This document shows, one piece after another, positions 8,300 to 27,800 of a DNA stretch of 64,000 nucleotides. This DNA is from Asterias rubens (taxonomy: Eukaryota): positions 8,928,001 to 8,992,000 of the forward strand of contig NC_047077.1 of NCBI RefSeq assembly GCF_902459465.1, given 5' to 3'. Within the stretch, counting starts at the first letter, position 1. Each line of letters begins with the position of its first letter. A program made the translations under genes and the position numbers. The notes below the pieces were generated by a model. That model searched no databases, was not told the DNA's origin, and saw only the letters and a list, made by a program, of their open reading frames with translations.

Positions 8300-11200
8300 A
8301 TGGCTTCGGCTTCGAAGAAAGAGAGTGTCAACCGCAATCTACGGTCCGTGTTGATCACGGAAAAGGCAGGAGTTGCACTGAATCGCTTGCAAGGTAATGT
8401 TTATGATGATGATGATTTACGTGAAGTTGTTTGCGTTTTAACCACCAGCACCACCAAAGCACCATGCATGCCTTCACACACACATGTGCAGCCTAGCGCA
8501 GCGGCCCATGGCTGCCTAGCCTGAGCTGATGAGTGGTGTAAAGTGGCATTGCGTTGTTGTCGTGGTGGCACGTCCATTTTCTACTACTTTCTTAACATTA
8601 CTCACTGATTACGTACTTAATTACGGTTTGATGGGAGGGTGATAGGCTATAAATTAGCCCCATTATTATTCCATTAATAAATAGTTGTGTCATTGTCAAA
8701 ATAATAAATGGGCCAAAAATAAATACGCCGGACTCCCTATTAAAACTGCCTTACTTACTTAACTTACAAAAAGCGGAGGGAGTCCAGCGTATTCGGCACT
8801 TCCTTGGTGCATGGATGGAGGTAGATTTCTCCTCCGTGGTTGGTAGGAAGAATATGGTAACTCAGGGCAATATCCACATAGTCCTCAGCCACCTTTTCAT
8901 TCGTTAGGAAATAATTGGATATCTAATTTACTTTCATTCTTTTCAAGTTTCATTAGAATTAGATTTAGATATTCCTTTTTTTCCTTTTTTTTTTCTTCAA
9001 ATTTGTCATGTTTATGGTGGCAGGGCCCCTGTTTAGTTTATTTATGCCCGGGCCGGGGCTAGCTAAAAATGTACCTGTAGACTTCGAACCAAGTTAACTG
9101 CAGACCGAGTGGACTTCAGACCAAGTTGACTTCAGACCTACATAAGGGCATCAATGTGTGGTGAAGAGGTTTTTAACTAGTGGTTTAAACCCGCCAAGGC
9201 CTGGTTCTTGATAATTTTACCAAGGCGAAGTCAAGGTAAATTATTAAGAACCAGGCCTCGGTGGGTTTAAAAATTACTAGTTGAAAATCGATTCAACACA
9301 CCTTGATTCCCTTAATCAATATTTAAAAAAAGTAGGTCTGAAGTCAACTTGGTCTGAGGGGGTCAGCTCTGAAGTCCACCTGGTCTGATTCATAAATTTA
9401 TGACCGAAAACGTATTTATACCTTTTCGTTAAAAAAAACATCAACACTTGTTGTCTAAAATTAAAAGAAAATGCAATAATTATAATTGTTCAATGATTTC
9501 TTTCAACACAACACTCCTCCAGCTATGAAATGGTAAGGCCCTCAACAGCCCTCGGGTAAACAACTCCTTAAAAGGGAATGATGTGGGCATCGCACGTATC
9601 GCGTGATGTGGCACAACTGTCCCGGCCGTTGCTCTCGACCAAAAGGAATGAAGAAACTAGCTTATAAGCACAGGTGCAAGCTTGCATGTCACGCCCATGT
9701 TTCAACACTTTTTACTGGTGTTATATTCTCCATTATAGGCCTAACACCCCCATGTGATGCCCTCTCGACCAATCAGAATGGATAAACTGTCGTAGGTTTT
9801 TATGAATGAAGTTTTTAAAAGAAGTAACTTATTGCACTACCATGAAGGCTGCATTAATGTAACAAATACAAGTTTTATTGTTTTACTTTTTGTACAGGAG
9901 AGTATCAAGCATTACTGGGTGAGACCATACCTTTTAAAGAGTTTGGGTTCCCTTCGCTTGAGGCTTATCTGAAGTCCATCCCGGCTGTAGTTTCCATCAG
10001 ACGGTAAGATGAACAAGAGTTTTTTATAATAGTTGTTGAATTTGCATCAGGGATAAAGAATGTTAATTTGGTTTTACCTTATACACCGAAGTAAATTTTA
10101 ATGGCAGTGGACACTATTGGTAATTACTCAAAACAGTTATAAGCATAAACCTCACTTGGTAATGAGTAATGTGTAGAGAGGTTGATAGTGTAAAACATTC
10201 TGAGAAACGGCTCCAGCTCTGAAGTGATGTACATGTAGTATTAGAGAAAGAATTAGAGTTTGAGACCTCAGCGTTAGAACTTGAGGTCCTCAGCGTTAGA
10301 ACTTGAGGTCTCAAAATCAAACATCTGAAAGCACACAACTTGGTGTGATAAGGGTGTCTTTCATAAACATGTAGTTATTTTGCAACTCCGACGACCAATC
10401 AAGCTCAATTTTTCACAGGTTTGTTATTTTTATGTTGAGATACACCAAGTGAGAAGACTGGTCTTTGACAATTACCAATAGTGTCCAGTGTCTTTAATGT
10501 AAATCTGTGGAAGTTTTGTGTTTTGTGTTGACGAAAAGTACCAAACCATTTCAAGGCACTGGACTCAAAAATAATTGATAGCATAAAACTTAAATGGTAA
10601 CGAGCAATGGAGAGCTGATAATAGTAAATTGTTAGAAAACCCTGAAGTAACATAGTTTTTGAGAAAGAGGTTATTTCTCACTCAAATAATAAAAGACTTC
10701 AGCTGAAGCCTTTTATTATGCCCACGAAAGTACTAAAAGAATGCAAGGGTGTTTCATTATTCTTTCATTATTCTCTTGCAATTTTGATGTCTAATGTAGC
10801 CCAAATTTTCCCTGGTTTATTATTTTAAACATATTTTTGGGATACACCAAGTGGGAATACTGGTCTGTGACAATTATCGAAGGTGTCCAGTGCCTTTACA
10901 CATGTAAGTGGTGCCATGGAATGAGCCATTTGCAAGTTAAATTTGAATAATGTCTGGTACAATGACTTGCTTATTGACAATGCACCCTTTACATTTGCAT
11001 TCCTCAGACTATCGGGACAGTTGCTTCGCCTTGTGATTAGGGGTTTGCTTTTGTATTGCAACCTCCAGGATGAGCAAACCCTGGTACCATTGTGTCATAC
11101 ACATCCATTCAGAATTGTGTATGGGTGTTCACCGTATCTTACACAACTACGCAAAAGCTTGCCCCTAATCACGTGGTGTAGCAACTGTCTCGATAGTCTG

Positions 11201-14200
11201 AGAAGAATTCAAATGAAAGCGGTGCATCGCTACTAAGCAAGTCATTGTACCAGACATTATTCAAATCTACGTAACTTGCACGTGGCTTATTGGGTCCAGC
11301 TGTTGTAGATAATTCTTCACAAAATAATTCTAATTTTTTTCTCGTGCAGGGGTCCAACTGGGGAGATGATGTGTGCGGCGGTTGCTGACGAGACGACCAA
11401 GCATATCGCTAGCCTCGTCAGCAGACAGAAAGGCAAGAAGTCCAGAGGGGTAAGATTTGGAGAAACAAAAATCATGCAAATCTTCATACACACAAGTCCC
11501 AAAATTGGTATGGGCTACATTCAACTATTTTTCCAGGGGGTCGTTACCACCAATTCCTTGGGCTGAAGCAGGGCTACTCTATACGATATGATGTCGGTGC
11601 AGGCTTTGGTATAATCCATATAAAGCCTGGCTGTTAGAGCATATATGGTACAGGTATATGGTACTTGATTACATGTATCACCAGAGGGCATTCTCACTCC
11701 ATAATTACTTTCGACTTTAGGATGTACCAACAATGCACCACAAGTCCGTTGGTTTCAAGTTGGTAAAACACTGCTCCAGAATTGCAAAGGTGGTGGGTTC
11801 CATTCTCACCCAAGTTATTTAATAGAAAGCTCTGGAAAGTACCGATTATACAGTGCTAACACACCGTATTATATAAGCAAAAAAAAAAGGTGTATAAAAT
11901 TATGGTTATTGTTTGATTTTTGTGCCAGTCTTAATAATGTGATGATAATTACTTTTTTGTTTTATTTCTCAAATTTAGCGAGGGATAAGGTCCAAACCTG
12001 GAAGGTCCTATGCTCATCCAACGTACGCCATGTCCAAGGCTCGGCCCGCTGGCAAGCTCTACACCAGTCGCTTTGTGCCTAAAACAGGGAGGTCAGGGAG
12101 GTACAACACGTCATTCAAACCGGCAGCAGCACAGCAACCAAAGCCAGTCCGATATAATCACACGTCCAAACCAGCGTACACTCATCAAACACAGACGGTC
12201 AAATACAACCCGATCAGACCGAAAGAGACAACAGCACCTAAACCCCTAATGTACACCCAACAGGCTCGACCAACCGCATCCCAACAGTCTAGACCGACAG
12301 CATTCCAACAGTCTAGACCAACCGCATCCCAACACTCTAGACCAACCGCATCCCAACAGTCTAGACCCACAGCAGGGCAACAGTCTAGACCGACAGGATC
12401 CCAACAGTCTAGACCCACAGCAGCGCAACAGTCTAGACCAGCAGGATACCAACATTCTAGATCGACAGAACCCCAACAGTTCAGACCAACGGCAGCCCAA
12501 GAGTCCAGACCGACAGCAGCTCAAAAACCCACAGCCGCCGAAGGAGATACCAAGCCACTTGTACCAACAGCAACTACTCAGCTACCCAACCCTGGTCCCT
12601 GGTCTGGTAAACTTGGCTCCAAGAAAAGTCAACAACCTGCCAAAACAACGACAGTAGGCACAACTCAGTCATCGACTTGGAAGCCAGCCGATGACTGGAG
12701 TGCTACAAACGGTCTCTCCTCCTCCTCTAAACCAATCCATGAGAACATTCATGTGACCATCCCCAATGATGGGGCTCGCCAAGTGAACAGTCAAGCATCC
12801 AAACCCGTTCACAATAACATTCATGTCACCGTCTCCAACAATGGTTATCGTCAAACTGAGGTGTCACCCCAGAAGCCAAATGGGAGACCAGGAAAACCCA
12901 GTAAACCGGAGTGGTCGTCTAACTTTGAGGTACCGCCTCGCTTCAAGAGATTAGTGTCCCCAACAGGTACTATAAATGAAGGTAAGCTGGTAGTTTTGAA
13001 CTTCTGAATTTGTGAAAAATGTTTGAGAAACGTCTCATGCATGAAACTTTTCTCAGATTGAAATATTTTTAAATCCCTCCCTCAAAAAACACATTCCTTA
13101 GAAAGAGAGTGTTTCTCAAAGTGGTTTCATTATCAAGAGGGTCAGTATTTCTTACCAAGTAAGTTTTTATGCTAAATAGTTCAATAGTCAAAGGTAGGCT
13201 TTACCTCCTCTTAAATGATATTTGAAATATTTTTTTTAAATCTTTGATTCATGCAGGTTTCCATAATACCCGGGAGTCTTCATTGAACTCTGACCCATCA
13301 CCAAATTATGACCCAACACCAAACTTTGACCAATCACCACCCAGCATTGCACAGCAACCGTCGTCAACGTCAACAAATAATGTTCTCTCTGAAACAGCCA
13401 ATGAAACATACAGCTGGATTCAAACTGTAAGAGTAAACAAATAACCAAAAACATTTAAAAGCAGTGGACACTATTGGTAATTGTCAAAGACTTAGCCTTT
13501 ACAGTTGGTGTATCTCAACATATGCATAAAATAACAAACCTGTGAAAATTTGAGCTCAATCGGTCTTCGAACTTGCGAGATAATAATGAAAGAAAAAATA
13601 CCCTTGTCACACGAATTTGTGTGCATTTTCTTATTTAAGGTCTCGAAAATCAAATTCTTGGAAAATTGGTTCTTTCTTAAAAACTAAGGCACTTCAGGGG
13701 GAGCCATTTCTCATAATGTTTTATACCACCAACCTCTCCCCATTACTCGTCAACAATAAAGGTTTTACGCTATTAACTACTTTGAGTAATTACCAATAGT
13801 GTCCACTGCCTTTAACCCAAAAGTGTTTGTATTGGAAAATGGTATGAACAGGGCATTTTAAAGAAAAGCACCTGTCCTTGAAGTATGTATGTAAACTACC
13901 CCTACACACAGACGTGTGACGGCTAGGAAAAAGTAGTGAACGCTTTGAGAGGCCTTCGGTATGATTAAGTGCTATCTGCTGTGTGTTTGTTTTGATTTTT
14001 TTTTATTTGTTTATGCAAGTCGCTGGACACACAAGTCGCTAGACACACAAGTCGCTAGACACACAAGGCCTGACTAATTTTCCAGGGTCCATTGCCACCT
14101 ACTCGTTGGGCTGAAACAAGGGTTACCCCTTTTACAGTCCTACAGGGATGTAGGCTTGGGTATCTAGGGCCACTGATTTTCCGCGATCGCGGAAAACGGA

Positions 14201-17200
14201 CGGAATTCGCGGAATCCGCCCTTTGAAACGGAAAACGGGATTTCAGAAAATTTGATTTTTTATTTATTTTTTTTTTCTTGACGCCAAAACTATTGAAATT
14301 GCATTCTTTATTAAGATTCTTTTTGTTAAACTAAAAAGGCATCAGAAATCAGACCATTAAAAAGTACGAGATCGTAACCGTGGATCATTCTGTTCTACTT
14401 CACACCATCCTCAATGTTTACACACATGATGTACACACGTTGTTAACATGGTTAAGCGAAGGGCATTATTCGCGGCTCGTTTTAAACATTTTTTGTTCAC
14501 CCAAATTGCATTTTCTCCCTCTCTTTTACCAACAATCATACACAAACTAGCTTACCTATGATCTATAAGAACACATACAATGTTTTTTCATCTCGGAAAG
14601 GTCTAAAATAAAACCGTAAACTGTCAACATTCTGTCGCCAAAGCGAAAACAAAATGGCTGACATTTTGTTTGTGGATGGAGAATGGTCACGTCCATAGAC
14701 TTGTTTCCAAGTCTTTGATCATGCTGAAACAGCGCCCTCTTGTGGATACGCTCCTGTCATTAGCCTACAATGTGGCTGATGCAGAGAATCAACTGCAGTT
14801 TTAGACTTGGAATCAAGTCTATCACATCATGTGCATTGATACTGCAGTCACAGTGCAACCTTTTTAGAACAGCAGTATACAAAATAATCCACAATTATAA
14901 AAAAAAGTATTTTTTTGAAATTTGTCAGTTCAAATGAACATTTTACGAAGTCAACAGTGCAACTTATCTCAAATTGATTTTTATAAGTGTGTCCCTGGGT
15001 ATTAAACAACCTTTTATCTAATTAAAAAAACATGAAACAGAATTTTTTGTGCCTGAAACGGAATTCATGTTTTTGCCAAACGGAATTTGCACTTTTCTGA
15101 AACGGAAAATCAGTGGCCCTAGGTATCGTCAATCTCAAGCCTGGCTAGTAGAGAAGAAAGCACTTCTGATAAGTGATTTCCTTTTTTGTATTTTCAAATA
15201 ATCCATAATCTATTTATATTTCTTATCTAGCTATGTGACTATTGTGTATGTTATTATGACTAGGTACTTGGTGAAAAGCCAAATGGTTTGTGGGCAAGTG
15301 CTCTGTGTGACAGGCATCTGAAAGAGTTTGGTCAGCCTCTGGATACTGACATCATCGAGCAAATGAATAAGCTCAGTCTGCTTGAGAAAGAAAGGTATGC
15401 AAATTATTTGTTAAAGTTGTTTGGCTTTTCTTGTTTCATGTGAGTATGTATCAATCTCTCAATCCGCTCTGTACTATGGCAATTTTTCATGTATTTGGTA
15501 CTATATGTGTGTCTAACTGAGACAACAATCATTTTTGTGACTCATCTAATATCCATGTTAATTTAATTGTTAAATGCTATGTTATGCATTTGTTGTGTGA
15601 GTCAACCAACCCCAGTGCAAAGGCGGTTTAGTCAGCACCATATTGGTCTTGACACTACAGCCAACGTGTATTATTTCTAAAACCCCCGTTTTTTCAACTA
15701 ATCCATATTTTGTTGATATTTGTTTGTGTCTTTACCAGCATCGCCAACAGTGACATCCTGTATCCTAAACTAACTGGAGCCCCAACTGTCACGCCAGTTA
15801 CACATGGCAGGTCAGGACAGAAAAACAATGCAGAGCACGGGAACCAGACTGGAAACGGAACCCCACAAAGGTCAGTCATTTGAAAGAGTCATGAATAATG
15901 CACGTTTACAAATGAATATGCACGATGCAAAATATTCCTGTAAGCAAATTCAAATTATGCATAATCAAATAATGTGTATCATCATTGGCTCATTTTCGTA
16001 ATGCAAACAGCAAAATGTTTAATGCATTTAAACACAGTCATACTGCATCTGCAAACGATTTCAAGTATTATGCAAATAATTAATGAATAATGCATGAAAA
16101 TCTCGCCTTTATTTCTTGTATTCATGAATTGTGTGAGCTTTGCATTTGTCTGGCATTTGGTGGGGTACATTTTTAGTTTCAATGAACAAACTAAGATTCT
16201 GCCCTTTGTTTAAAGCTTTGTTGTTAAATATCTTGATTTTTCAAAGAGCATCACAAACACGTTCAAGATTCACACTGTCAAGTATTGTGTGTTTGTTTAG
16301 AACTGGAAATGGGTTCTCAAGATCTAGGCATTGTGTTTCATTTTGTGTGCTGTAGTAGTTTGTTTAGATCAGTGCCGTGTCTGTAATTATATATCCTAAC
16401 CCAGTTGTCTCCATGGAAACACATCAACCAAGCCCTTTGATCACACTAAGCCAGTCCATTCAGGAAACCTCTTTGGAGCAAACCTTGACATTGCGCTCAT
16501 TCTAAGGAATGTGTGTAAGAGACAAAACTTGCCAGTAGAGTTCTACGTAGACTCCACGAAGCAACCTGGAAAGTCTGCAGTGTGCGTGATCTGCACTGCA
16601 GGCACAGATGTTGCCACAGCACATGGGCTAACCATAGGTACCGCTAAGCAAGCTGCAGCGGGTGAAATCCTTCAGCAGTGGAACGTGGCTCCTAGCGACC
16701 TAGGCAATACCCCGCAGGTCTCTCCAGATGAGTGCGTCCAAAGTACCACAGACCATGATTATGAAACCCAGCTTCAAAATGAAAAAATCATGAAGAGGTT
16801 GAGAAGGTTTGGTCCAGCAGACGATCTAAAAGGTAGTGAGAATCTGTTCCTAAGAGAGGAGCATGTTAAAGGCTTCTGCAGTTGCTTTGGCGGGCGTGGC
16901 ACTTGTCCATTTCAGATCCCAGTCTCTCCTGAAGATTGCATGGAAAGAGCCAAAGCCTACGACGAGAAAGCCCAAGAACAAAATGAAAAACTGTTGAGGA
17001 GGCTGAAGAGGTTTGGTCCAATAGAAGATATTTCAGATGAGGAGAAGCTGTACTTGAGAGTTGAGCATGTTGGAGGCTTCTGCAGCTGCTTCAGCAGTGG
17101 GCACAAATGCCCATTTCAGATCCAGATCTCTCAGGTGGATGGCATCAACAGAAGCAAAGAGACTGTCCAGGATGAGAAAGCCCGACTACAAAATGAAAAA

Positions 17201-20200
17201 CTGATGATGAGGTTGAAGAGGTTTGGTCCAACAGGAGATCTGCAAAATCATCCACGTGGCATTTTTTCCTCGACCAGAAGTGAAGACAAATTTTGTGTGT
17301 TGAATTCCGGAAAGCCGGACCATCGTAGAGCAACTCCTGCTGTTGAAGGGAAGAGTGACTTTGACATACATGTAGAAGAAGAAACCATTAATCATATAAG
17401 TTGTTCAGATGAAGTAAATCAACGTGGTCTGTCAGAACCAACGTCAAGTGCCACATTTCCACTCGCCAAAACATACAAATCATTTGAGAATCCATTGGCA
17501 CCAGAATCTCGGAGAGCAACAGATCAGGAGGTTCGGCAGGCTCTCAAAGTAACATTTGGTAAAACCGCCATCTACGAGACTGTCAAGCACATGGGAACTA
17601 AAGAAGACCCACTCGTTAGTGTGTGCTTCATGGCAGGGGCGTTCGTCGGAATCGGGAGGGGCGGCACAAAGACTGAAGCGAGGAAGGCAGCTCTTGAAGA
17701 TCTGCTCAAGAAGCAGGGAGAGTTCTTACGAGTAAAGAGTGAACTCCAGGAACAGGCGGCGAAGGGAAAGAATGCCATCCTTCAAGAGTCTCTGATGGAT
17801 TTGAGTCTTGATTCTGACGAGGAGAAGCTAGAGGTAAAATCGGAGCCAGCAGCCACTGTTTTTGATGAAGTACTTGTACAGGATGAACAAGTAGTGAGTG
17901 TGAAGGTTGAAGCTGGATCAGTAACTGGACTACAGACACAAGCTTATCTCCCACCAGCACTTCCCCAGAATGGACAGTTGTCACCACCACCCAATATGGT
18001 GGACTCTGCTGAAATGAAACCCGTAATTGGTCCAACCAGGCAGCCTTCGCATGGGCGTGGTTACACAAGATGGCAAGTTGATCCTCAGTACAGGTCAAAC
18101 AGGTTAGCCATCCGCACTTATACCAGCATTTCTGTTTTTAATTTCACTTGTTAAACGCTAACCACCCCCAAACCAATCAAAATCCAACAGCATGTTTTGT
18201 TGGACTGAGGACTGCACTAGGAAACTGTTCGTTTTGAACATGTCAGGCATACACATGTACTTTGTTACCATAACCAGATAAAGCTGGTTGAGTTACATGT
18301 TGCATTGAATTTTGTTGGAGTGAGGAAGGCTCTTGGTAACATTTCAAGGAGTTTTGGTGTTAAGCTGGAAAGGCTCGTTCATACTCCTTGCTCTATAACA
18401 AGGTAAACACTGCTGCGAACCTAATATCTGCAACAGCAGAACTTAACTAACCTCAATTTGAATTTATAAGAATAATGATTTGAGAGCTGTTTTAGATGAG
18501 CACCTCTGGAAGAAGTTAGGGCTTTTCACTTTGGTGTAAGACAGAAAATAATAGGCTTTCAAGCTCTCTGTGTTGCTCCCAGCTTGAACTTGCCTGTCCC
18601 CTTCATCCCTTCATTGTTTGCATGCTTTTGTTAACACCTTTTTCCATTTTTTTCTGGCAAAGTTAACTTACCATGCAGTTGTGTTTCCATGCATGCTTGT
18701 CATCATTTAGGTTTTTATGTGTGATTTGTCATTGGTTCATTTTGGCACAGGCTCTGTGACTACACTTGAGCGGAAAAATGTACCAGGCTGGCCAAATGTG
18801 TTTTATATTCGGTTTATGTTTATGTTTGTTTTAGCAAGATGAAATAACAATCATTAGAAATCACTCACTGTTGTATATCATGTAATCATGTTATTTTTTT
18901 CACAGGAAAACTAACATTATTGTAAAGACAGGATTGACATTTTTACAAATGCCTGCTCACATCGCGGACTCGAGGGAGACATCAACTTGATGATTTATAC
19001 GGAGACTTGAACTTGACCTCTGTGAGCAGAGCAGAATTTCATTGTTGCTCTGCTTACTGCAAAATGTATGCTTATGGTTTCCTTTTAAGCACATAATTAT
19101 GTAGGCAGTAACTGTTTAAAGACACTGGACACTATTGGTAATTTTCAAAGACCAGTCTTTTCACTTGGTGTATCTCAACATATGCATAAAATATCAAAAC
19201 TGTACAAATTTGAGCTCAATTGGTCGTTGAAGTTGCGAGATAATAATGAAAGAAAAAAACACCCTTGTCACACGAAGTTGTATCCTTTCAGATGCCTGAT
19301 TTCGAGACCTCAATTTCTAAATCTGAGGTCTCAAAATCAAATTCGTGGACAATTACTTCTTTCTCTAAAACTACAGTACTTCAGAGTACTCACAATGTTT
19401 TATACTGTCAAGTCAACCTATCCCCATTCGCTACCAAAAAAGTTATTATGCTAATAACTATTTTGAGTAATTACCAATAGTGTCCACTGCCTTTAAGCAC
19501 AGAAATCTTTGGTAAGCAGAGCCATAAATTACACTGTACATGTAGACCTGAAAAATGCATGAATTTCATATTTGTTTCTGACTGTGTAAAGTTAATTAAC
19601 CCTCCTTATTTCTGACCATTTAATACCATCCACTGTGGTTTTAAATAATAATAATAAATAATGTTGAACATTTCTAGTGCGTCATGTCTGTCAATGATGA
19701 CACTCCTGGTGCAAAAAAACAAGAACTCTGCTAATACACAATGACACAAGACAACCAAAAGTTTGAAGGCTATTGTTTCCAAAACATATGTTTTCAGATG
19801 AGTTTTGAATGATACGTATATGACAGCCTGCATTCTGATCATTTAGTTAATGTACACAGTACAGGCCTGATGACATGAATGGACGCCTGAAGGCTTTTGT
19901 TGCCCTCGTCTGGGCCAGGGCCCAATTTCATAGAGCTGCTTAAGCACAAAATTTTGCTTAAGCAAAACATCCTTGCTTAGTAAAATCAGATTACCGGCCA
20001 AGACTCCACTCAATTGTTATGCTAAGTAAACAACAGCTAAATACCAGTCACAAGCAATGTATATGGCATAAAGTTTGGGCCAGTAACGTGTAAAATAAGC
20101 GAGCTATTTTCGTGCTTAAGCAAATTTTTTGCTTAAGCAGCTCTATGAAATTGGGCCCTGGTCTTGGCCTTGGTGCACTTTCCATTGAGGTCCCCTCTGC

Positions 20201-23200
20201 AAAATAAAGATGGCCTTGCCCTTGCTTCGACAGGTGAGTCGAGTCCCCTTTTCAGATCTGGGTCTCTCAGGAAGATTGCATTGACAGAACCAAAGCAATA
20301 GTCTACGTTGAAAAAGTACAAGAACAAAATTCCTTGCCCTCTCAAAGATGAAATGTCCAGACCTGAAGTATACATGTGTACCAACAGTTAGTTATGTGCT
20401 CAGCAGTGACACCCATACACAACCTGTGCAGCTTCAGTGGTTTTGAATGGTCAGTTAACTGGAAACATTAGCAAGAGTAGGAGAGTTTTTAAATAACACG
20501 AGCATGTATTTAACTCATTTTTTAATTATCCATGTTTGACTTTGACCTAATCGGCACAAGTTCTGTCATTTTTGTACAGCATCAATTCTTTACAAAGTTC
20601 ATAATAATGTTTAGTACCAACAGGCAAATAACACTCCACACTAGAACCTAAAGTTGAGGCTAAGTACCCGGATCTCCTACAAACATGTCTTGTGCACGTA
20701 TGTGTACCAGTTTTTGGATTACTCCTGTACGGTACTTGCAGGTGCAGTTTGCCAATTGATGCGGTGATCATGTAAAGTGGTGGAATGTTTGTTGAACATT
20801 AAGCTGATTATTCTAATGCCAACTTTCTTTCCCAACTTAATAATCAGTTCACCCAGATTGCCTGAAGAGGATACGCCCAGTGAGGGGTACAGCTCGCCCA
20901 CTTTAGGGGTACCTAGTTCCCTCAGTGAGCCTAGCAGTAGACCGCCCTCCACAGTGGCACCCGGTAGCAGACCATCCTCAGCGGATTCACCCAGTACACT
21001 CGGGGAACCGTGCGAGGAAGGGTACAGTTCACCTACTTCAGAAACGCTTGGTTCATCCAGCGAGCCCAGCTATGAGGGGAGTTACTCGACCATTGATGCA
21101 CCCGGTGTGCCCAGTCTGGTGCTACCCGAGGAGAAGGAATGGGATCTGTATGTAGCGTATATCAAGAGTTTGTCGGACTTCTACGCCATTCTTATTGGAG
21201 ATGACTATTCGGTAAGAATTCATGCATTTATCAAACTGTTGACCCCACCCCCCCCCCTTACACCATTGTAGTGACATCATCATCAGTGCTAAAATTTTAC
21301 ACTGGCCCACGGGCCTGAGGCCAGTATATCAGGCCAGTAAACTAATGACTGGGGTAAGTAATATTGTGATCAAAATGTTGATTTGGGTCTGATAAAATAC
21401 CTTCATTTCTATTTAGTAATGAAGTATTTTAACACCCGTACAGCCGTAAAGATAAATGAGATCAATCTTCTCTTTACATGTCTAAAGCTTGGTTCATACT
21501 TCCTGCGAATGCGAATGCGACACGAATGTTGACGTCACAAATTCGCAAAGAATAATTCGCAGCAGTTCAACTTTGCTCAACTCACTTGGAATATCGCTGC
21601 GAAAGGAGGGTGTGACGTCAAATTCGCTTCGCATTCGCATTCGCAAGAAGTGTACGAACCGGGCTTTAGGCCGTATCGGAATTTGTGGATACAGCTTTTT
21701 CTACGGCTGTTGCTGACGGGGTAGCTAAAAGGATGTCCTATACCTCAACGCATGATTACGCGGAAATCTAACTGTAGCCGTAGCTGTAGCTGCTAATTCA
21801 AACACGACCTTAAGTTAGTTACATGTGTTTTGTGCCTTTCAAAATTTAATGAAGTTTACATTGTTGCAACTGGTGCCCCACTCCTTATTTTGCTTAGCAA
21901 TTTGCTAAGCAGTATTCTGTTTTTGCCATTTTGTGTTGATTAAATTTATTTCTCTGGTACAACAGGAGCAAATGATAATCATGGAGGAAGCGATGCGATC
22001 ATTCTACCAGTGCAGTACGTGGGTACTGACTGAGCCACCAGAGGTAGGAGTGTGCTACGCTGCAGAGTTCAACAGGGAATGGCTCCGGGTACAAGTTACG
22101 TCAGTAGAGGATGAGCAGGTAACGTCTTAAGTGCTTGGTCCAATTGATTGCAGATCCAATTTATTGCAGATACTGGTGGTCAATGTCACTGTTTGTTTTG
22201 CAGTGAAGTGGGCATTTAGGCGACGCAGCATTTACACATAAACCTATTGCCCAACAACATGGTGAGCAAGAAAATTCAAAATGTATCATGCTTATTTGTG
22301 TTCCAAACCAACTCTTGATTAGTGTGCCAGCGAGCTACATGTAGCCCAATATTTCTGTCATTTTTTTAAACGTTTATTCTTGTTTTCTATTGTTGTTATG
22401 CTTTTACTATTAGGTGTTCATATTTTTTGTGTACACAAACAAGGAAGACAAATTTCATGCTTGTTTTCATGACAATGATTATTTTGAATCCTGATTCTTG
22501 AAGTTCCCTCTTATTTAGGAAAACAAATGCAAATGCAGACTTCAAGCTTTTGTGTGTAAATGTATACTCTTGACATAAAGGTTATTATATAATTATTGAC
22601 CAAACTAACAGCTGTCGAGCCGCCAATTACAGGAAAGGATAATACACAATTAAAAATATTCATATAGCCTAGTACATAGTTAAAAATAAAAATAGAAACA
22701 TCTTTGGAAAAAAATTGAAGCAAACATTACAAAGTTAAATAAGTTACAGATGGGAAAAGAAACAAATGTTCGACTGTAGTGTACAAATATATATTATAAA
22801 TTTATGTTATAAGCATATAGGCCTACATTAATTATAATAAAAAAACAATATGAAAAAAAAATATATATATATATGTGAGATACTAAGACTAAAGGTAACA
22901 ATAACAATGCCAAGATAAAAATAACAATATCACGACTACATTCTAATTCTTTGATATTTTGTATTGCTTACAGGTGAAGTGCTTTTTACTTGACCATGGG
23001 GACACTGAGAGTGCAACAATAACCTCCCTCAGACCGCTGGCAGAAAAGTTTCTGCAGCTTCCGTTCCAGGTAAATTCAACCAACGATTCATTGGGTCCTG
23101 CTCAGGGCGCAATTTCATAAAGCTGTTTTGTGAATGTCTTTGCTGAGCAAGAAATGAGTAGGGCACCAGTCGCAGTAATGGTGACTGTATTGTATGCTGG

Positions 23201-24823
23201 CTGTATTGTATGCTGGCTGGTAACCTAATTTTGCTTAGCAAGGGTCTCCCGTGCTTAAAGGCTTTTGGGATAGATATAGTGCTAGAATGTAAAAAAAACT
23301 GAACTGTCAGACTATAGGCGCAAAGCGTGAAAACGGAGTGTAAAGCCTGCTTACATACATTTATCTTTTGTTTTAAAACCCCTACTCTAATCTGGGGCGT
23401 TCTATGTATATGGTTTTTACTTCTCGTTTTAATAAAATTTATCTCAATTATAAATTTTGTTAACAAATTTTTTTTGAGGGGTGGTAAAAAAATGTACTTC
23501 TGGGTAAAACCTGAGAAAACACATCCATGTATACAATAGCCTGAACATCTGACGTCACACTGAGGCTCTTGAATAACGCCAGAGACTGGTCTCCAGCCAG
23601 CGTGTACATGCACCTTTGACCTACATTCATTTCACATAGAGATACGCAGTCAAATTCTATGGGGGACGTGATAGGAGTGTACACTGTTTGGGAATGTATG
23701 GAAAGCTCATGTCACTGGATGTGCATGTTTATCCAATGGTATCATTGTATCCAATGGAATCACTGGATCTGAGTTGCAGGTACCTGTGGATAAAGACAGG
23801 GGCCCAGTCTATGTATACAACAGTTATTGATAAAATGGTTGTTTTGTCTCTTCAGGTTATTCATTGTAAGTTATCGCAGTGTGAGCAAGTGGCTCATGAT
23901 GATAAGACGGCCCTCCAGATGTTTTGCCAACTTGCTCTGGGGAAAAGTCTCCTAGCTGAAGTTGTCTCAAGGTGAGTGGGTTTGGGGTCAAAGGTGAAAT
24001 ATTGCACTGGTGTTCAGTTTTGAAAAATTAATCTGTTTTATGCATGAAGCTTATTTTCTTCTGAAGACGAGCAGAGTATACTGTTTGCAAAGTCGAGACC
24101 ACACCCAACACTTCTCCCAAAAGAGATTTTACACTTACATGTTGTTGTACCCACATGGTTGCTTTTATTTATAGTTCATTCTAACCTTATGAAGCTCTTG
24201 TTGCTAATATTCCATTGTCCTTGCTGTAATTTTCTTTTTATTTTATTGAAAATTTACTTGCAATTTGACTGATGCCTCGAATTTTAAATTTTTGAATGAA
24301 CCATGTATGAATAAATTAATAAAAGTAGGAATTATTTATATTGTTACGAGTGGGGGAAAAATATGAAAAATGATGAGAAAATAGTCTGAAAATGTTTAGT
24401 TAAAGCATACACCATGTGTAGGTCAGCCTTTGTACTCGGTTTTATACTTACACTTTTTTTCAGGAATAATTTTCATGCCTTCTTATTGAATGTATTATAA
24501 TATATTATAGTCACAACTTTTTTTTTTTATATGGCTTATGCCCCTGTATAGATTTTGCAAGTTTTTATTAACATCTTTAAACTTTCAGACTGGTTACCAA
24601 TTTTGGTCTTGCAGTATATAATGTGATGTACATGTTTTTACCCCAAAGTTCCCCACAATATTGAAAACCTTGCAAGACTTATACACACTCTATTTCCGTC
24701 CGTCGTTTTTTATTTGTCGGTTTTCTGTTTTGTTTTAACAGAGATGGTGACCGGATAGAGATGGAGCTTTTTGATAGCTCAGATGTATCCATCCTGGAGC
24801 AGTGTTCAACTGCTGGAATATAA
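8300..24823 (+). CDS. tdrd7: TDRD7-like LOTUS/dsRBD/Tudor protein, 13 exons, about 1411 aa
   Basis: Phase-consistent exons: 8300-8393, 9898-10003, 11350-11449, 11979-12981, 13257-13426, 15264-15394, 15739-15870, 16405-18102 (alternative donor 18093), 20857-21211, 21966-22118, 22974-23069, 23856-23971, 24742-24823; total 4236 nt. The N-terminus GVALNRLQGEYQALLGETIPFKEFGFPSLEAYLKSIPAVV closely resembles TDRD7 LOTUS1 as recalled (GVALPRLQGEY...IPFKQLGFPTLEAYLRSVPAVV). LOTUS2 is VLGEKPNGLWASAL...ILYP. The extended Tudor includes WLRVQV, CFLLDHGDTE and FLQLPFQVIHCKL. Orthology versus paralogy is not established. Confidence 0.85.
10098..10497 (-). mobile_element. MITE family 1, reverse orientation (TDRD7-like intron 2)
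   Basis: Begins ...gcagtggacactattggtaattactcaaa and ends tttgacaattaccaatagtgtccagtgtctttaa. Confidence 0.85.
10549..10898 (-). mobile_element. MITE family 1, divergent subfamily, reverse orientation
   Basis: caaggcactggac ... gacaattatcgaaggtgtccagtgccttta; the body resembles 2799-3174. Confidence 0.7.
11979..12981 (+). CDS. TDRD7-like exon 4: low-complexity region with 11 octapeptide repeats (QQSRPTAx)
   Basis: Acceptor aatttag at 11978, donor g|gtaagc at 12981. In frame with the provided ORF 12030-13007. Confidence 0.8.
13455..13815 (+). mobile_element. MITE family 1, 28 nt downstream of the TDRD7-like exon 5 donor
   Basis: Both TIRs and TTAA are present. Confidence 0.85.
14165..15121. 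mobile_element. Non-autonomous TIR element (957 bp) with a 6-bp target duplication, inserted into a SINE
   Basis: TIR tagggccactgattttccg / cggaaaatcagtggcccta. Direct repeat ggtatc at 14159-14164 and 15122-15127. Subterminal aacggaa repeats; no transposase ORF. Confidence 0.85.
16405..18102 (+). CDS. TDRD7-like exon 8 (1.7 kb): dsRBD-like, ~69-aa His/Cys repeats, second dsRBD-like
   Basis: Acceptor cctaacccag at 16404 keeps phase 2 and opens into ORF 16511-18154. dsRBD-like 1 spans about 16487-16681 (LRNVCKRQNLPVEFY...AHGLTIGTAKQAAAGEIL). dsRBD-like 2 spans about 17525-17713 (IYETV...VGIGRGGTKTEARKAALEDLL). Confidence 0.8.
19116..19496 (+). mobile_element. MITE family 1, full copy
   Basis: Both TIRs and TTAA are present. 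Confidence 0.85.
19915..20161. mobile_element. Palindromic MITE (cagggcccaatttcat family)
   Basis: Long inverted arms cagggcccaatttcatagagctgcttaagca. Relatives occur at 38807-39002, about 23103-23260, about 37838-38015 and about 40440-40490. Confidence 0.8.
20211..20330 (+). pseudogene. Degenerate intronic copy of the exon-8 His/Cys repeat unit
   Basis: Translates as CPCFDR*VESPFQIWVSQEDCIDRTKAIVYVEKVQEQN, colinear with CSCFGGRGTCPFQIPVSPEDCMERAKAY-DEKAQEQN, and contains an in-frame TGA. Confidence 0.7.
21483..21813. mobile_element. Two abutting small TIR elements (21483-21668 and 21666-21813), possibly Harbinger-like
   Basis: First: taaagcttggttcatacttcctgcgaatgcgaatgcg and its inverse. 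Second: ttaggccgtatcggaatt / aattcaaacacgaccttaa. Both are flanked by TAA/TTA. Confidence 0.65.
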
Positions 24824-27800
24824 ACCAAACATGCGCTACTTTTCTAAAACATTTTTTTAGTCGCAATCTTGATGGAAGTGATTGTTGTCTCCTTGTTGGT
24901 TATTCTTAAGACATGAAGACACCTATATGTAGACCCTCTTAGAGACCCTGGAATATAAACCAAAAATGCGCTGCTTTTCTACGCTGTTTTTTTTTATACT
25001 CTTAATTCTGGTGGAATGGATGGTTTTCTCTTTGTTGGTTATTCTTAGGGTGTGAAGTCACCTCGTCCCTCTTTGAGATCCCGGTTCTGTCCAATCTGTT
25101 TGAGCACCATGAGCGAATAATGGACAGTGGTAGTCTAAAGTCCAAGCCAAGGCCTTTGTATTATAGATGTCTCTTTTGGTTTTGTTTATGTTACTCAGAT
25201 ACTAATTCTGGTTAGGGTCGGCCATAATATGCCCAGAGACCCTTTGAAGTGGATGTCACTTTTTAACCTTTCAAAGAACAATGTAACGCACAGCAATGTG
25301 GGATGAATTTGTTGTAGATAGGATTTTAACAGTACTTTCTTGTTCTGGTCTCACAGCTAAATGTGTGTGTACGTGTAAGTTCAGGGAGGACTGGGAGTGG
25401 GGTAGAAAAATCACCAGTGCATTGAAAATTGAAATTGTAAAATGGTTGCCTTTTTCAAACCCTCTTTGTACAAAAGCTATAAATATAATAACAGACAAAG
25501 AAAAGCTTTAGTCCATGTGATAGGCCTACGTATGTTCTGGCAAAATAAGGCAGAACTGTACAAGGTAGGTTGAATAAAACTGTGCGCTAGTTGTTAAGTT
25601 TTCATGAGATTTCAGTAGCACTGTAAGCCGTAAGATGAGTAGCTTGGGCTTTATCTTTTGCTAGAACGTGAGGCATGGCATGGGCGCCATTTTGGTAATA
25701 AAATCATTGTTGTAGCGTTGACAATGATTGATAGCAATACTCATTGATCTATGGTTGCATTTCAAGTTGCCGCTTACTAAAATGGTGTCCGATGCATGTT
25801 CGCACAATTGTGTCTTTAAAAACTTTTTAAAACTTGTGATTGAAATGTATTATTACAATAACGAACGCATTTGTATGCAGGCCCTATACTCTGTTCCTGT
25901 GAGGGCAAGGGCATTTTTTTTTTTATAGTAAAGGGCACCTTCTTGAAGTTGCCACTTAAATTTTTCAAGAGGCACAATCAAGGAATTGGTGAAGGATTTG
26001 GGGGCAGTCGTCTTGACTCCTTCAAGTATCATGCTTGTCTCAAATTATTTTCAAAAACCCTTTTAGGAACTAATAAAAACTCGTTCAGGTTTTTTATTTG
26101 ATCTGATTTGGAAAGAACACATAAATCCTTCTTGCCTATTGATAACATTCCATGAATAGCTTTGAACCAAAATGCCCTTTATTTTTGTTTATCTTCAATC
26201 GATGTCCTTTAATCTTGCTTTACTTGTTATTTCGTTGTTGTACATGTTTTTTTTTTCCAATTAGCATAAGTCCATATCTTGCTTTTTATATTTTTACTTT
26301 AACAAATTGAGAAAATTAAAAGAGAACACAATGCCTAGGAGGTTGATCTCAAGTAGTTGCGGGAGAAGAGGCTCAACTTCTTTGAGGAAATGTTTTAGTA
26401 TAACAACCAAATTTCAGATTTATTAAGCCAATCGTTATTTTGTTCACATTTTAAGAAAAATATGTTCTTTGACCTACGTTTGTACTCTAGTACTCTGGAG
26501 ACAATGTTACTAATAATGCTCTGTGAAATCTTGACTTTATTGGTTACCAAAAGGTGGAAATCTATTTCTACCTCGATGTTTCACCGAAGCTTGACAAATT
26601 TGAGTCCTAGTTTTTAACTTTTTTTTGTCGGCAACAACTATCACATATCTGGTAATACATTCATCTTCTTACACCACACAATTTATCCCTGGCGCTCCCA
26701 AATGCTCTACTCAAGACATGCAAGAAGTTATACATATCACTTTGTACATGCATGATATCCTTCCTACAGGTACTTAAGTTTTTGTTGTTGTTTTTTTTAG
26801 CCCTCAGAAAAACAAGCAATTTTTTATTTTAAATGCACTATCATGGGTACAAAAGCCTTAACCAAATACTTGTAGGTCAGCCCTTGTACTCCGCAAAGTT
26901 TTCATAATTGTTTTTACAAGAGACAAATTTAGATGTATATAGGATTTGACACTTCTAGGTTCTAAATAACCATTACATATACATGCATGTCCATATAACC
27001 TGTGACATCAGGTTTATTACAAAAGAGCAACAGATCATGGACTGTCTACCATGTGTGCAGGCAAAATTTGTACACAGATCAATGGAAGATAACACTAATA
27101 CTGGGGGCGCATCTCAAAACTTGTTCAATAAGTTGATATTTTTCAACTCTGGAATTTATGTGGTTATTATGATTCAAAGTGTTAACTTTTCCATCATTAT
27201 TATGACAATTTTGAAATCTACACCATACATGTATGTCAGCCATTGTACTAAATCACAATTGCTGCACAAACGATGTAATGTATATGCAATGTAAATAAGA
27301 AACCTACATGTATGTTGAAATATCACAACATGTTTTGCTTATTTGACTTCATTCTACAAATACACCCCCGTACCAGTGTTCCTGTCATTTGACGCACGGT
27401 TTGTTTACTGCATTTAAGTGAGGGAACAGGGTACATGTATATGGCCTTTCTTTCTGACTGTTGAGCAGAGACAAAGTCTTTTCCATTCTTTCGCAAAACT
27501 GTTATTAAACCATGAAGTCATAAGTGCTAAGGTCTAAAAATTGGTGTTTAGAGGACATTTTGCTTTTGTTGGAAATTCTTAAAGGATTGGTCTAGGTATT
27601 AAATGTGTATGTAAAAAAAATATTGGTGAAGTCTATTATTAGTTTAACAAACAACCCAATCCAAACATTTAAAGTCATCTTTTTTTTTTACCTAAAGAAT
27701 CACTTTGGTACATATAGTACATGGATGTCCGATATTGAAATGATTTCATTATCAGTCCGAATACTTGATGTCCTGTGTGTGCATGGGATCTTTTTCTGGT

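What the first reader, a model, noticed from the sequence alone, without database searches (positions are those of the whole stretch)
8300..24823. Atypical TDRD7-like architecture: eLOTUS + LOTUS + 2 dsRBD-like + novel repeats + a single extended Tudor
Established: vertebrate TDRD7 has three LOTUS and multiple Tudor domains. Seen: LOTUS1 is TDRD7-like, no third LOTUS is apparent, and the protein stops (IEMELFDSSDVSILEQCSTAGI*) right after the first extended Tudor. I found no further Tudor exons before TUBGCP5. The canonical KKxAK motif is degenerate in both dsRBD-like domains (TIGTAKQAA, TKTEARKAA), so they may bind protein rather than dsRNA. Inference: a lineage-specific nuage factor linking dsRNA or dsRBD partners to the Vasa/PIWI machinery. 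Some invertebrate LOTUS-dsRBD fusions may already be catalogued.
Basis: partly seen in the sequence, partly recalled or inferred. Interest (0 to 1): 0.7.

Follow-up and report, generated by a model that had tools for sequence, protein, structure and literature searches.

The report
Sea-star TDRD7 relative with helicase-binding motifs
This is a real, expressed 13-exon sea-star gene for a remodelled TDRD7-type germ-granule scaffold: two of the usual three Tudor domains are replaced by two dsRNA-binding-type domains, and between them sit short helices that match the motif the mRNA-export factor SARNP uses to bind a DEAD-box RNA helicase.

Summary
A 13-exon model on the + strand (8300-24823, all introns GT-AG) translates exactly to Asterias rubens LOC117300681, a 1,414-aa "uncharacterized protein".

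RNA contigs from three studies show the last four splice joints. One contig runs unspliced through the stop codon, so the protein does end after a single extended Tudor.

Domains found:
- an extended LOTUS closest to TDRD7 LOTUS1;
- a second winged-helix domain whose best structural matches are TDRD7 LOTUS2;
- two dsRBD folds with degenerate RNA-contact residues;
- one complete eTudor that keeps only 1 of 5 aromatic-cage residues.

New here: the "novel repeats" are a 204-nt tandem duplication. Each unit holds a perfect match to the SARNP/Tho1 DDX39B-interacting motif (K-x3-R-x2-[RK]-F-G), followed by an unexplained H-x4-C-x-C-x6-C knuckle. In a scan of the whole genome, this locus is the second-best match to the Tho1/MOS11 model, after the SARNP gene itself.

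An exhaustive HMMER search with the central exon found relatives only in two other sea stars. The same genome has a separate TDRD5-like gene and no second TDRD7-like gene.

Most likely it is an asteroid-specific TDRD7 derivative that recruits DEAD-box helicases at several sites. Binding and germline location were not tested. This scan had noted the 69-aa repeat before, on this same window.

The parts
8300..24823 (+). Coding region of Asterias rubens LOC117300681 (1,414 aa). It has 13 exons: 8300-8393, 9898-10003, 11350-11449, 11979-12981, 13257-13426, 15264-15394, 15739-15870, 16405-18102, 20848-21211, 21966-22118, 22974-23069, 23856-23971 and 24742-24823. The stop codon TAA is at 24821-24823.
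   Evidence: The translation equals P0003 exactly and all introns are GT-AG. The last four joints are seen in RNA contigs. The model is colinear with P0001 and P0002.
8318..11443 (+). Extended LOTUS domain (aa 7-98, exons 1-3), including the C-terminal alpha-5 extension DETTKHIASLVSRQ.
   Evidence: Pfam OST-HTH scores 45.7 bits. The ortholog scores 68 bits against TDRD7 2lh9/3rco, and its match to TDRD5 3s93 runs through residue 98. The small residue in GVA and the Ile in HIASL match the Vasa-interface positions described in PMC5458760 (the mapping is my inference).
12256..12518 (+). Tandem repeat of 24 nt x 11 in exon 4, encoding QQSRPTA(x) octapeptides within a disordered region.
   Evidence: TRF reports period 24, 11 copies and 79% matches. 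The repeat is not conserved in the orthologs.
13394..15775 (+). Second LOTUS-like winged-helix domain (aa 481-547, exons 5-7).
   Evidence: No Pfam hit, and hhalign against LOTUS1 is weak. The AF2 model has pLDDT 72 with alpha-beta-alpha-alpha-beta-beta topology. Its best Swiss-Prot AFDB hits are TDRD7 residues about 220-300 in 13 vertebrate entries plus C. elegans tag-250, with E about 1e-2. PDB hits include TDRD7, Oskar and MARF1 LOTUS domains, tied with generic winged helices.
16484..16684 (+). dsRBD 1 (aa 606-672), non-canonical: the KKxAK motif reads IGTAK.
   Evidence: Pfam dsrm scores 27.4 bits on the exon and 24.8 bits on the full protein. The AF2 model shows alpha-beta-beta-beta-alpha with pLDDT about 80. 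VIA gives Z 10-10.8 to dsRBDs.
16775..17239 (+).
   Evidence: TRF score 489 with 75% matches. The protein units are 51% identical.
16766..16822 (+). DIM-like motif 1 (KIMKRLRRFG).
   Evidence: It fits K1xxxR5xx[RK]8F9G10 of PMC10508174 and lies in predicted helix 114-133 of the exon-8 model.
16970..17026 (+). DIM-like motif 2 (KLLRRLKRFG).
   Evidence: Pfam Tho1_MOS11_C scores 19 bits, E 0.0014. It is the second-best hit to that model in the whole genome and lies in predicted helix 175-201.
17180..17236 (+). DIM-like motif 3 (KLMMRLKRFG).
   Evidence: It fits the consensus and lies in predicted helix 256-268.
17258..17308 (+). Degenerate fourth motif (SEDKFCVLNS); the orthologs have RAERFCV here.
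   Evidence: Alignment A4. In Asterias the R5 and G10 positions are lost.
16862..16906 (+). H-x4-C-x-C-x6-C knuckle 1 (HVKGFCSCFGGRGTC).
   Evidence: The motif is invariant across the three sea stars. It has no confident fold and no family match.
17066..17110 (+). H-x4-C-x-C-x6-C knuckle 2 (HVGGFCSCFSSGHKC).
   Evidence: Same evidence as for knuckle 1.
17498..17734 (+). dsRBD 2 (aa 944-1022), divergent: the KKxAK motif reads KTEAR.
   Evidence: Pfam dsrm is below cut-off at 14-19 bits. The AF2 model shows alpha-beta-beta-beta-alpha with pLDDT about 70-77. VIA gives Z 8.2-8.7 to ADAR and HYL1 dsRBDs. Identity to the orthologs is 56-58%.
20217..20345 (+). Relic partial copy of the repeat unit inside intron 8, with an in-frame stop. 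It is not part of the mRNA.
   Evidence: tblastn E 6.5e-7 and DNA alignment A5. RNA contigs start exon 9 at the 20848 acceptor and none of the contig pieces shown lies on 20217-20345; that list is partial.
21119..24805 (+). Single extended Tudor domain (aa 1236-1409, exons 9-13) with a degenerate aromatic cage.
   Evidence: Pfam TUDOR scores 76.4 bits. The ortholog aligns end to end with TDRD1 eTudor 5m9n, residues 32-200. In that alignment WYR becomes WLR, Y becomes L and DYGN becomes DHGD.
24824..28000 (+). Long 3' UTR, about 3.1 kb; its end is inferred.
   Evidence: The 3,974-nt X1 contig is contiguous from 24740 to beyond 26699, with 1,280 nt more. AATAAA signals lie at 27978 and 28000. 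Contigs are unstranded, so overlap with the convergent GCP-like gene cannot be excluded.

Best explanation
The locus encodes an asteroid-specific, remodelled member of the TDRD7 family of LOTUS-Tudor germ-granule scaffolds.

Shown:
- It is a 1,414-aa protein from a spliced mRNA.
- It has an N-terminal extended LOTUS of the TDRD7 type and a second LOTUS-like winged helix.
- Two dsRBD folds lack most canonical dsRNA-contact residues.
- Between the dsRBDs lie three helical motifs that fit the SARNP/Tho1 DDX39B-interacting motif, alternating with H-x4-C-x-C-x6-C knuckles.
- A single C-terminal extended Tudor has a degenerate aromatic cage.

Inferred mechanism:
- The protein acts as a hub for DEAD-box helicases with several binding sites.
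- The eLOTUS binds and stimulates Vasa through its C-terminal RecA domain, as shown for TDRD7, TDRD5 and Oskar.
- The spaced DIM-like helices bind the C-terminal RecA domain of a second helicase, with UAP56/DDX39B the obvious candidate. They may instead bind several helicase copies and promote their oligomerisation on RNA, as SARNP and MOS11 do.
- The dsRBDs and the cage-less eTudor serve as protein or structured-RNA docking modules that do not depend on arginine methylation.
For: Gene and transcript:
- The exon model is identical to P0003.
- GT..AG joints appear in contigs of three studies, and one contig runs unspliced through the stop.
- The same colinear architecture and C-terminus occur in Patiria and Acanthaster.

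TDRD7 affinity:
- LOTUS1 scores 68 bits to TDRD7 against 42 bits to TDRD5.
- The LOTUS2 model best matches TDRD7 residues about 220-300.
- The nearest ESM Atlas clusters are TDRD7 (0.93).
- The genome's other LOTUS loci are MARF1-like, TDRD5-like (61.7 bits to 3s93) and one ambiguous locus with no Tudor nearby.

dsRBD folds.

DIM-like motifs:
- Three perfect fits to K1xxxR5xx[RK]8F9G10.
- Tho1_MOS11_C is the only Pfam family hit repeatedly (E 3.9e-5 on P0001:670-830 and E 0.0014 on window copy 2).
- The genome-wide scan gives only 4 hits, with SARNP first and this locus second.
- hhalign against the genome's own SARNP motifs gives probability 93.8%.
- The motifs sit in predicted helices separated by low-confidence linkers, as described for SARNP and MOS11 (PMC10508174, PMC12809590).

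eLOTUS-Vasa mechanism: PMC5458760.
Against: - No binding was tested, and complex prediction could not be run because no unspliced helicase domain was available.
- The Tho1_MOS11_C scores stay below Pfam's gathering cut-off (23.9 against 26.8 bits).
- A PDB profile search with the motif did not retrieve Tho1 or SARNP, and ESM Atlas gave nothing for that segment.
- The hhalign test is partly circular, because both alignments were centred on the RF dipeptide.
- The three Asterias copies come from one tandem duplication, so they are not independent. The Patiria and Acanthaster copies fit the consensus less well (G10 becomes C, and F9 becomes I in one).
- SARNP acts in the nucleus whereas TDRD7 is cytoplasmic.
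- Tissue of expression is unknown because the runs are coded.
- LOTUS2 is supported only at E about 1e-2.
Confidence: 0.55

Rival explanations
1. It is simply the sea-star TDRD7 ortholog doing the usual TDRD7 job, recruiting Vasa into RNA granules through its eLOTUS. The central region is a fast-evolving linker, and its R-x3-F-G helices and cysteine knuckles have no helicase-binding role.
For: - The LOTUS1 and LOTUS2 affinities are with TDRD7.
- The repeat region is the least conserved part of the protein, at 17-19% identity with 35-38% gaps between orders.
- The Pfam scores are sub-threshold.
- One Acanthaster copy has lost F9.
Against: - R5, R8 and F9 are at least 90% conserved across 10 copies in three species, despite the poor conservation around them.
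- Genome-wide, the only better match to the Tho1/MOS11 model is SARNP itself.
- The flanking dsRBD2 is well conserved at 56-58% identity, so the central module is under constraint.
Confidence: 0.3
2. It is mainly a nuclear or somatic RNA-processing or antiviral factor rather than a germ-granule component. On this reading the SARNP-like motifs and dsRBDs define its function, and the LOTUS and Tudor domains are inherited scaffolding.
For: - DIM motifs are otherwise known from nuclear mRNA-export factors (PMC10508174).
- dsRBD pairs are typical of dsRNA-pathway proteins.
- Vertebrate TDRD7 also has somatic roles in the lens and as an interferon-stimulated gene (titles).
- The tissue of the RNA runs is unknown.
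Against: - The eLOTUS carries the alpha-5 extension and the interface residues of the Vasa-binding class.
- Both dsRBDs lack most canonical dsRNA-contact residues.
- No SAP domain or other nuclear export-factor feature was found by Pfam.
Confidence: 0.12
3. The architecture is an annotation artefact: two or three neighbouring genes (a LOTUS gene, a dsRBD gene and a Tudor gene) have been fused by gene prediction.
Against: - The contig then continues into exon 10.
- Reading-frame phases fit across all 12 introns without a stop.
- The same order of domains is predicted independently in three species of two orders.
Confidence: 0.03

Closest known systems
TDRD7 (vertebrate TDRD7, Drosophila Tapas, bivalve TDRD7)
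   Same: - The N-terminal eLOTUS is closest to TDRD7 LOTUS1 (68 bits).
- The second LOTUS-like domain best matches TDRD7 LOTUS2.
- The C-terminal extended Tudor and the overall LOTUS-then-Tudor order are shared.
- The nearest ESM Atlas clusters are TDRD7.
   Different: - It has one eTudor instead of three; bivalve TDRD7 has 2 LOTUS plus 3 Tudor domains (PMC8277629).
- It has no third LOTUS.
- Two dsRBDs, DIM-like motifs and cysteine knuckles occupy the middle of the protein.
- The aromatic cage is degenerate.
TDRD5 (Drosophila Tejas)
   Same: It has LOTUS domain(s) followed by a single Tudor, and its eLOTUS carries the alpha-5 extension (the alignment to 3s93 runs through residue 98).
   Different: - LOTUS1 scores 26 bits lower against TDRD5 than against TDRD7.
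- The genome has a separate TDRD5-like gene on C20 (61.7 bits to 3s93).
- TDRD5 has neither dsRBDs nor DIM motifs.
SARNP / Tho1 / MOS11 (DDX39B-interacting motif, DIM)
   Same: - It has three alpha-helical K-x3-R-x2-[RK]-F-G motifs separated by flexible linkers.
- It gives the only repeated Pfam hit to Tho1_MOS11_C.
- It ranks just behind the genome's SARNP gene in a whole-genome scan.
   Different: - It has no SAP domain.
- The scores are below the gathering cut-off.
- The motifs are embedded in a LOTUS-Tudor protein and alternate with H-x4-C-x-C-x6-C elements that SARNP lacks.
- Binding to DDX39B has not been tested.
Type-B (protein-binding) dsRBDs such as Loquacious dsRBD3, TRBP dsRBD3 and Staufen dsRBD5
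   Same: It has the alpha-beta-beta-beta-alpha fold. The top structural hits are these domains (Z 10.3-10.8), and the canonical RNA-contact residues are degenerate.
   Different: The Z-scores are tied with RNA-binding dsRBDs such as RNase III (Z 10.2), so the type-B assignment is only suggestive. dsRBD2 keeps K and R of the KKxAK motif.

Membership tests
TDRD7 | N-terminal extended LOTUS (eLOTUS) with the alpha-5 extension, closest to TDRD7 LOTUS1 | tested here: met
   It scores 68 bits (E 5e-18) against 2lh9/3rco and 42 bits against TDRD5. The alignment to 3s93 covers the extension. Pfam OST-HTH scores 45.7 bits.
TDRD7 | Additional minimal LOTUS domains (LOTUS2 and LOTUS3 in vertebrates) | tested here: inconclusive
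   LOTUS2 has no Pfam hit, but its winged-helix model best matches TDRD7 residues about 220-300 at E about 1e-2. LOTUS3 was not found.
TDRD7 | Three (extended) Tudor domains | tested here: not met
   There is a single TUDOR hit at aa 1238-1356. The transcript runs through the stop without further splicing, and no other Tudor exon lies in the window.
TDRD7 | The only gene in its genome with the best match to TDRD7 (orthology by reciprocal comparison) | tested here: met
   The other LOTUS loci are MARF1-like (C7), TDRD5-like (C20) and an ambiguous locus with no Tudor found nearby (C11). No phylogeny with outgroup TDRD7 sequences could be built.
TDRD5 | LOTUS1 closest to TDRD5 | tested here: not met
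   It scores 42 bits to TDRD5 against 68 bits to TDRD7. A separate TDRD5-like gene exists.
dsRBD (Pfam dsrm) | alpha-beta-beta-beta-alpha fold and a score above the gathering cut-off | tested here: met
   dsRBD1 scores 27.4/24.8 bits against a cut-off of 23, with Z 10.8. dsRBD2 has the fold (Z 8.2-8.7) but scores only 14-19 bits.
dsRBD (Pfam dsrm) | Canonical dsRNA-contact residues (helix-1 Glu, GPxH loop, KKxAK) | tested here: not met
   Read from the sequence. dsRBD1 has LRNVC, QPGKS and IGTAK. dsRBD2 has no His loop and reads KTEAR. RNA binding itself was not tested.
SARNP/Tho1/MOS11 DIM | Consensus K1-x3-R5-x2-[RK]8-F9-G10 with invariant R5 and F9, in an alpha-helix | tested here: met
   KIMKRLRRFG, KLLRRLKRFG and KLMMRLKRFG fit the consensus (consensus from PMC10508174). 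R5, R8 and F9 are at least 90% conserved in 10 copies. The motifs lie in predicted helices.
SARNP/Tho1/MOS11 DIM | Pfam Tho1_MOS11_C above the gathering score | tested here: not met
   The best score is 23.9 bits (E 3.9e-5) against a cut-off of 26.8. In the genome scan the SARNP exon itself reaches only 23.3 bits.
SARNP/Tho1/MOS11 DIM | N-terminal SAP domain (membership of the SARNP family proper) | tested here: not met
   Pfam finds no SAP domain in P0003. The protein therefore carries the motif but is not a SARNP.
SARNP/Tho1/MOS11 DIM | Binding to the DDX39B C-terminal RecA domain | not testable with these tools
   No unspliced sea-star helicase domain could be handed to complex prediction.
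Methyl-arginine-reading extended Tudor | Complete eTudor (Tudor plus SN-like) fold | tested here: met
   It aligns to residues 32-200 of TDRD1 eTudor 5m9n, and to TDRKH and Krimper-type chains.
Methyl-arginine-reading extended Tudor | Aromatic cage (F/Y, Y, Y, Y, N) | tested here: not met
   In the alignment to 5m9n, F is kept, WYR becomes WLR, gYv becomes fLl and DYGN becomes DHGD. These residues are identical in the three sea stars.

The most novel reading that the evidence does not exclude
A single polypeptide combines two unrelated modules that each grip the C-terminal RecA domain of a DEAD-box helicase. One is an eLOTUS for Vasa; the other is a set of SARNP-type DIMs for UAP56/DDX39B. Such a protein could physically hand RNAs delivered by the nuclear export helicase to Vasa at perinuclear germ granules. 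A UAP56-to-Vasa relay was proposed for Drosophila piRNA precursors (my recollection of Zhang et al., Cell 2012; not checked here), but no bridging protein is known. The H-x4-C-x-C-x6-C knuckle would then be a new small zinc module coupled to each DIM.
Probability: 0.15. Interest if true: 0.8.

Novelty: new variant of a known kind. Interest (0 to 1): 0.5.

Why it matters
LOTUS-Tudor scaffolds organise germ granules by recruiting Vasa. How other helicases and RNAs are brought in is still open.

This protein shows that the family's architecture is flexible. In sea stars, two Tudors and one LOTUS have given way to dsRBDs and to a motif otherwise known only from SARNP-type export factors, where it binds and oligomerises a DEAD-box helicase.

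If the motifs are functional, the DIM would be shown to work as a portable helicase-recruiting module outside mRNA export. That would also give a tractable system, because Patiria miniata is a laboratory model for germline specification.

If they are not functional, the finding is still a cleanly documented, lineage-specific domain swap in a conserved germline gene that is annotated only as "uncharacterized".

Tried and rejected
- **The search for homologous proteins with exon 8** found nothing because of the length filter. With LOTUS1 of P0001 it found only the sea-star proteins. With the eTudor it found only the three sea-star proteins.
- **PDB phmmer with the repeat region** gave only a chance hit, CD82.
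- **PDB profile search with the 10 motif copies** did not retrieve Tho1 or SARNP.
- **ESM Atlas on the motif segment** gave no usable hit.
- **Per-copy Pfam scan of 28-aa windows** matched in only 2 of 10 copies.
- **hhalign of LOTUS2 against LOTUS1 and other LOTUS domains** was in register but not significant (probability 3%).
- **TDRD5 identity** was rejected.
- **The C11 LOTUS locus as a second canonical TDRD7** was rejected. No Tudor was found within about 30 kb or in the genome-wide scan. Its identity remains open.
- **A single-exon UAP56 or Vasa C-terminal domain for complex prediction** could not be found. The large open frames with Helicase_C are RecQ-like ORFs present in near-identical copies, probably carried by a mobile element. 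No complex job was sent.
- **Literature searches** found no paper on these loci, none combining LOTUS, dsRBD and Tudor, and one unrelated paper mentioning both Tdrd7 and Patiria miniata.
- **The marine metatranscriptome run X5** matched only intronic repeats on the stretch laid, so it gives no evidence of expression.

Full report
**What is there**

The window is G000:C17:8928001-8992000 of a 417.6-Mb genome. Six-frame reading of 8000-25500 showed a chain of + strand open pieces. Pfam found OST-HTH, dsrm and TUDOR in them, plus a weak Tho1_MOS11_C signal.

An exhaustive HMMER search of 1.84 billion representative proteins with the big central exon returned only two proteins. These are "uncharacterized" proteins of the sea stars Patiria miniata (P0001, 1,407 aa) and Acanthaster planci (P0002, 1,215 aa). 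I used them as guides and enumerated frame-consistent GT-AG splice sites. This gave a 13-exon model.

A later search returned P0003, Asterias rubens LOC117300681, 1,414 aa, also "uncharacterized protein". The model with exon 8 ending at 18102 translates to exactly this sequence, and all 12 introns are GT-AG. The window is therefore A. rubens, and the gene is catalogued but unnamed.

**Does the protein really stop after one Tudor?**

Yes. I laid contigs of four runs on 20700-26699. Runs X1, X7 and X11, from three different studies, each carry GT..AG joints at 21211|21966, 22118|22974, 23069|23856 and 23971|24742. So these runs contain spliced RNA, and exons 9-13 are as modelled.

A 3,974-nt X1 contig enters the last exon at 24740 and stays colinear with the genome through the TAA at 24821-24823 to beyond 26699. 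It has 1,280 nt more, which places its end near the AATAAA signals at 27978 and 28000.

It continues into exon 10. Both orthologs end with the same ...LEQxxxAGI.

No other Tudor-like exon lies in the window, by tblastn or by a genome-wide Pfam scan. The next gene is a gamma-tubulin-complex-like gene on the minus strand (weak GCP_C_terminal hit at 32633-32923), so the two genes converge.

One caveat: the contigs are unstranded, so part of the long "3' UTR" could belong to that neighbour.

**Which family?**

- LOTUS1 of the ortholog scores 68 bits (E 5e-18) against the solved TDRD7 LOTUS1 structures. It scores 42 bits against TDRD5 and about 17 bits against Oskar.
- The alignment to TDRD5 3s93 runs through ...DDTTQHIGSLVSRQKGKK, the C-terminal helix that defines the Vasa-binding "extended" LOTUS class (PMC5458760).
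- The Ala in GVA and the Ile in HIASL sit at the two interface positions that paper describes. This mapping is my inference from the alignment.
- The second putative LOTUS has no Pfam hit and only a weak, in-register hhalign match. It folds as a winged helix at pLDDT 72.
- Its best Swiss-Prot AlphaFold matches are residues about 220-300 of TDRD7 in 13 vertebrate entries, plus C. elegans tag-250, at E about 1e-2. PDB hits include TDRD7, Oskar and MARF1 LOTUS domains, tied with generic winged helices. I take it as a probable divergent minimal LOTUS.

In the same genome, the Pfam LOTUS scan finds four loci:
- a three-domain MARF1-like cluster on C7;
- a TDRD5-like gene on C20 (61.7 bits to TDRD5, 29 bits to TDRD7);
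- an ambiguous LOTUS gene on C11 with no Tudor found nearby;
- this gene.

The closest paralogs of the eTudor are only the big multi-Tudor genes on C22 and C10. So this is the only TDRD7-like gene the scans detected in this genome. Even so, it fails the three-Tudor criterion that bivalve and vertebrate TDRD7 meet (PMC8277629).

**The middle of the protein**

AlphaFold on the three-species alignment of exon 8 gives two alpha-beta-beta-beta-alpha domains, at pLDDT about 80 and about 72, with a low-confidence region between them. An all-against-all structural search gives Z 10-10.8 for the first domain and Z 8.2-8.7 for the second, all against dsRBDs.

The top four hits are protein-binding dsRBDs: Loquacious dsRBD3, STAU1 RBD5, Staufen dsRBD5 and TRBP dsRBD3. 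RNase III dsRBDs are within 1 Z unit, so this is only suggestive.

The helix-1 Glu and the GPxH His are also missing from both domains.

**The "novel repeats"**

These are a 204-nt x 2.2 tandem duplication at 16775-17239. Each unit begins with QNEK[IL][ML]xRL[RK]RFGP. The published consensus of the DDX39B-interacting motif of SARNP/Tho1 is K1-x3-R5-x2-[RK]8-F9-G10, with R5 and F9 invariant in all 37 motifs surveyed. The motif lies on an alpha-helix that docks on the helicase's C-terminal RecA domain (PMC10508174). KIMKRLRRFG, KLLRRLKRFG and KLMMRLKRFG fit every specified position, and all three lie in predicted helices.

The orthologs carry RLEARAARFG, RAERFC and NKRAERFG at the equivalent places. 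Across 10 copies, R5, R8 and F9 are at least 90% conserved, although the region as a whole is only 17-19% identical between orders.

Further support:
- Tho1_MOS11_C is the only Pfam family hit repeatedly. It gives E 3.9e-5 (23.9 bits, cut-off 26.8) on P0001:670-830 and E 0.0014 on the second window copy.
- A six-frame scan of the whole 417.6-Mb genome with that model gives four hits. The best and the fourth lie in a gene on C16. Its exons read ALRAERFN, KLKKRSERFG and RLLKRKQRFG, so it is evidently the SARNP ortholog. The second-best hit is this locus.
- A profile-profile comparison of the two motif sets gives probability 93.8%. Both sets were centred on RF, so that figure is inflated.

Negative results:
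- the gathering cut-off is not reached;
- a PDB profile search missed Tho1;
- ESM Atlas gave nothing;
- the protein has no SAP domain.

So the protein is not a SARNP, but it carries what looks like SARNP's helicase-binding motif in three or four spaced copies. That is the arrangement reported to drive helicase oligomerisation by MOS11 (PMC12809590).

The second half of each unit, L[FY]LR[EV]EHxxGFCSCFx5CPFQI, keeps H-x4-C-x-C-x6-C in all three species. It has no confident fold and no family match, and remains unexplained.

**The Tudor**

The C-terminal 180 residues align end to end with the extended Tudor of TDRD1 (5m9n residues 32-200), and with TDRKH and other eTudors. In that alignment only the first aromatic-cage residue survives: WYR becomes WLR, Y becomes L and DYGN becomes DHGD. 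These residues are identical in the three sea stars, and the domain is the best-conserved part of the protein at 72-79% identity. It is therefore probably a constrained eTudor that does not depend on arginine methylation.

**Mechanism proposed**

Shown: the architecture, its expression as a spliced RNA, its restriction to sea stars at the sensitivity of the searches, and the motif matches.

Inferred:
- the eLOTUS binds and stimulates Vasa;
- the DIM-like helices bind a second DEAD-box helicase, or several copies of one;
- the dsRBDs and the eTudor dock partners.

I put the hub model at about 0.55. A plain TDRD7 ortholog with an inert linker is at about 0.3, a mainly somatic or nuclear role at about 0.12, and a fusion artefact at about 0.03.

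**Novelty**

The gene models exist in RefSeq as "uncharacterized protein", and no paper mentions them. The combination of LOTUS, dsRBD and Tudor was not found in the literature searched or outside sea stars. It is a new variant of the TDRD7/TDRD5 kind. The new idea is a SARNP-type helicase-binding motif in a germ-granule scaffold.

I confirm the repeat and add the identification of its helical half.

Noticed in passing
window 20217-20345 (intron 8): A relic partial copy of the second half of the exon-8 repeat unit (CPCFDR*VESPFQIWVSQEDCIDRTKA...) with an in-frame stop. None of the contig pieces shown lies on it; the list is partial.
   Followed up: partly
window 12256-12518 (exon 4): A 24-nt x 11 tandem repeat encodes QQSRPTA(x) octapeptides. 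It is absent from the Patiria and Acanthaster orthologs, so it is a recent expansion inside a disordered region.
   Followed up: partly
P0003 aa 334-341; P0001 aa 658 and 1091; P0002 aa 608: A short W-K-[PS]-x-D-D-[WQ] motif recurs at different places in the three orthologs. The conserved linear motifs PGPWSGKLG and EWSxN[FY][ED]VPPRFK[RK]L also lie in the first disordered region. Their function is unknown.
   Followed up: no
window 21300-21700 and 23500-24000 (introns 9 and 11); also 10114-10338(-), 13590-13796 and 19250-19477: High-copy interspersed repeats. RNA-contig depth there is 10-100 times that of the exons. Several intronic open frames end in the same ...L(I/T)TILSNYQ peptide, so one repeat family has inserted several times in this gene.
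   Followed up: no
L012 (G000:C15:13746500-13749500), L013 (C3:11020500-11023500), L014, L015, L016: Intronless RecQ-like helicase ORFs of 400-480 aa in several copies. L012 and L013 are almost identical over more than 400 aa. They probably belong to a recently active mobile element.
   Followed up: no
L004/L007 (G000:C11:1857000-1866999, minus strand): A fourth LOTUS gene (MAEGLQAQVKKDTRGVLLSRMGGVPLDKFNRDYQELLGNRFPYRDLGF...). It has no clear TDRD5 or TDRD7 affinity, and no Tudor was found within about 30 kb. Its identity is open.
   Followed up: partly
L019 (G000:C5:9310598-9313636, minus strand): Another exon carries a DIM-like KEKRTNRAKRFGIK motif. It is the third-best genome-wide hit to Tho1_MOS11_C. 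The gene was not identified.
   Followed up: no
window 24824-28000 and 32633-32923(-): The gene's roughly 3.1-kb 3' UTR runs towards a convergent gamma-tubulin-complex-like gene on the minus strand. The two 3' ends may overlap.
   Followed up: partly
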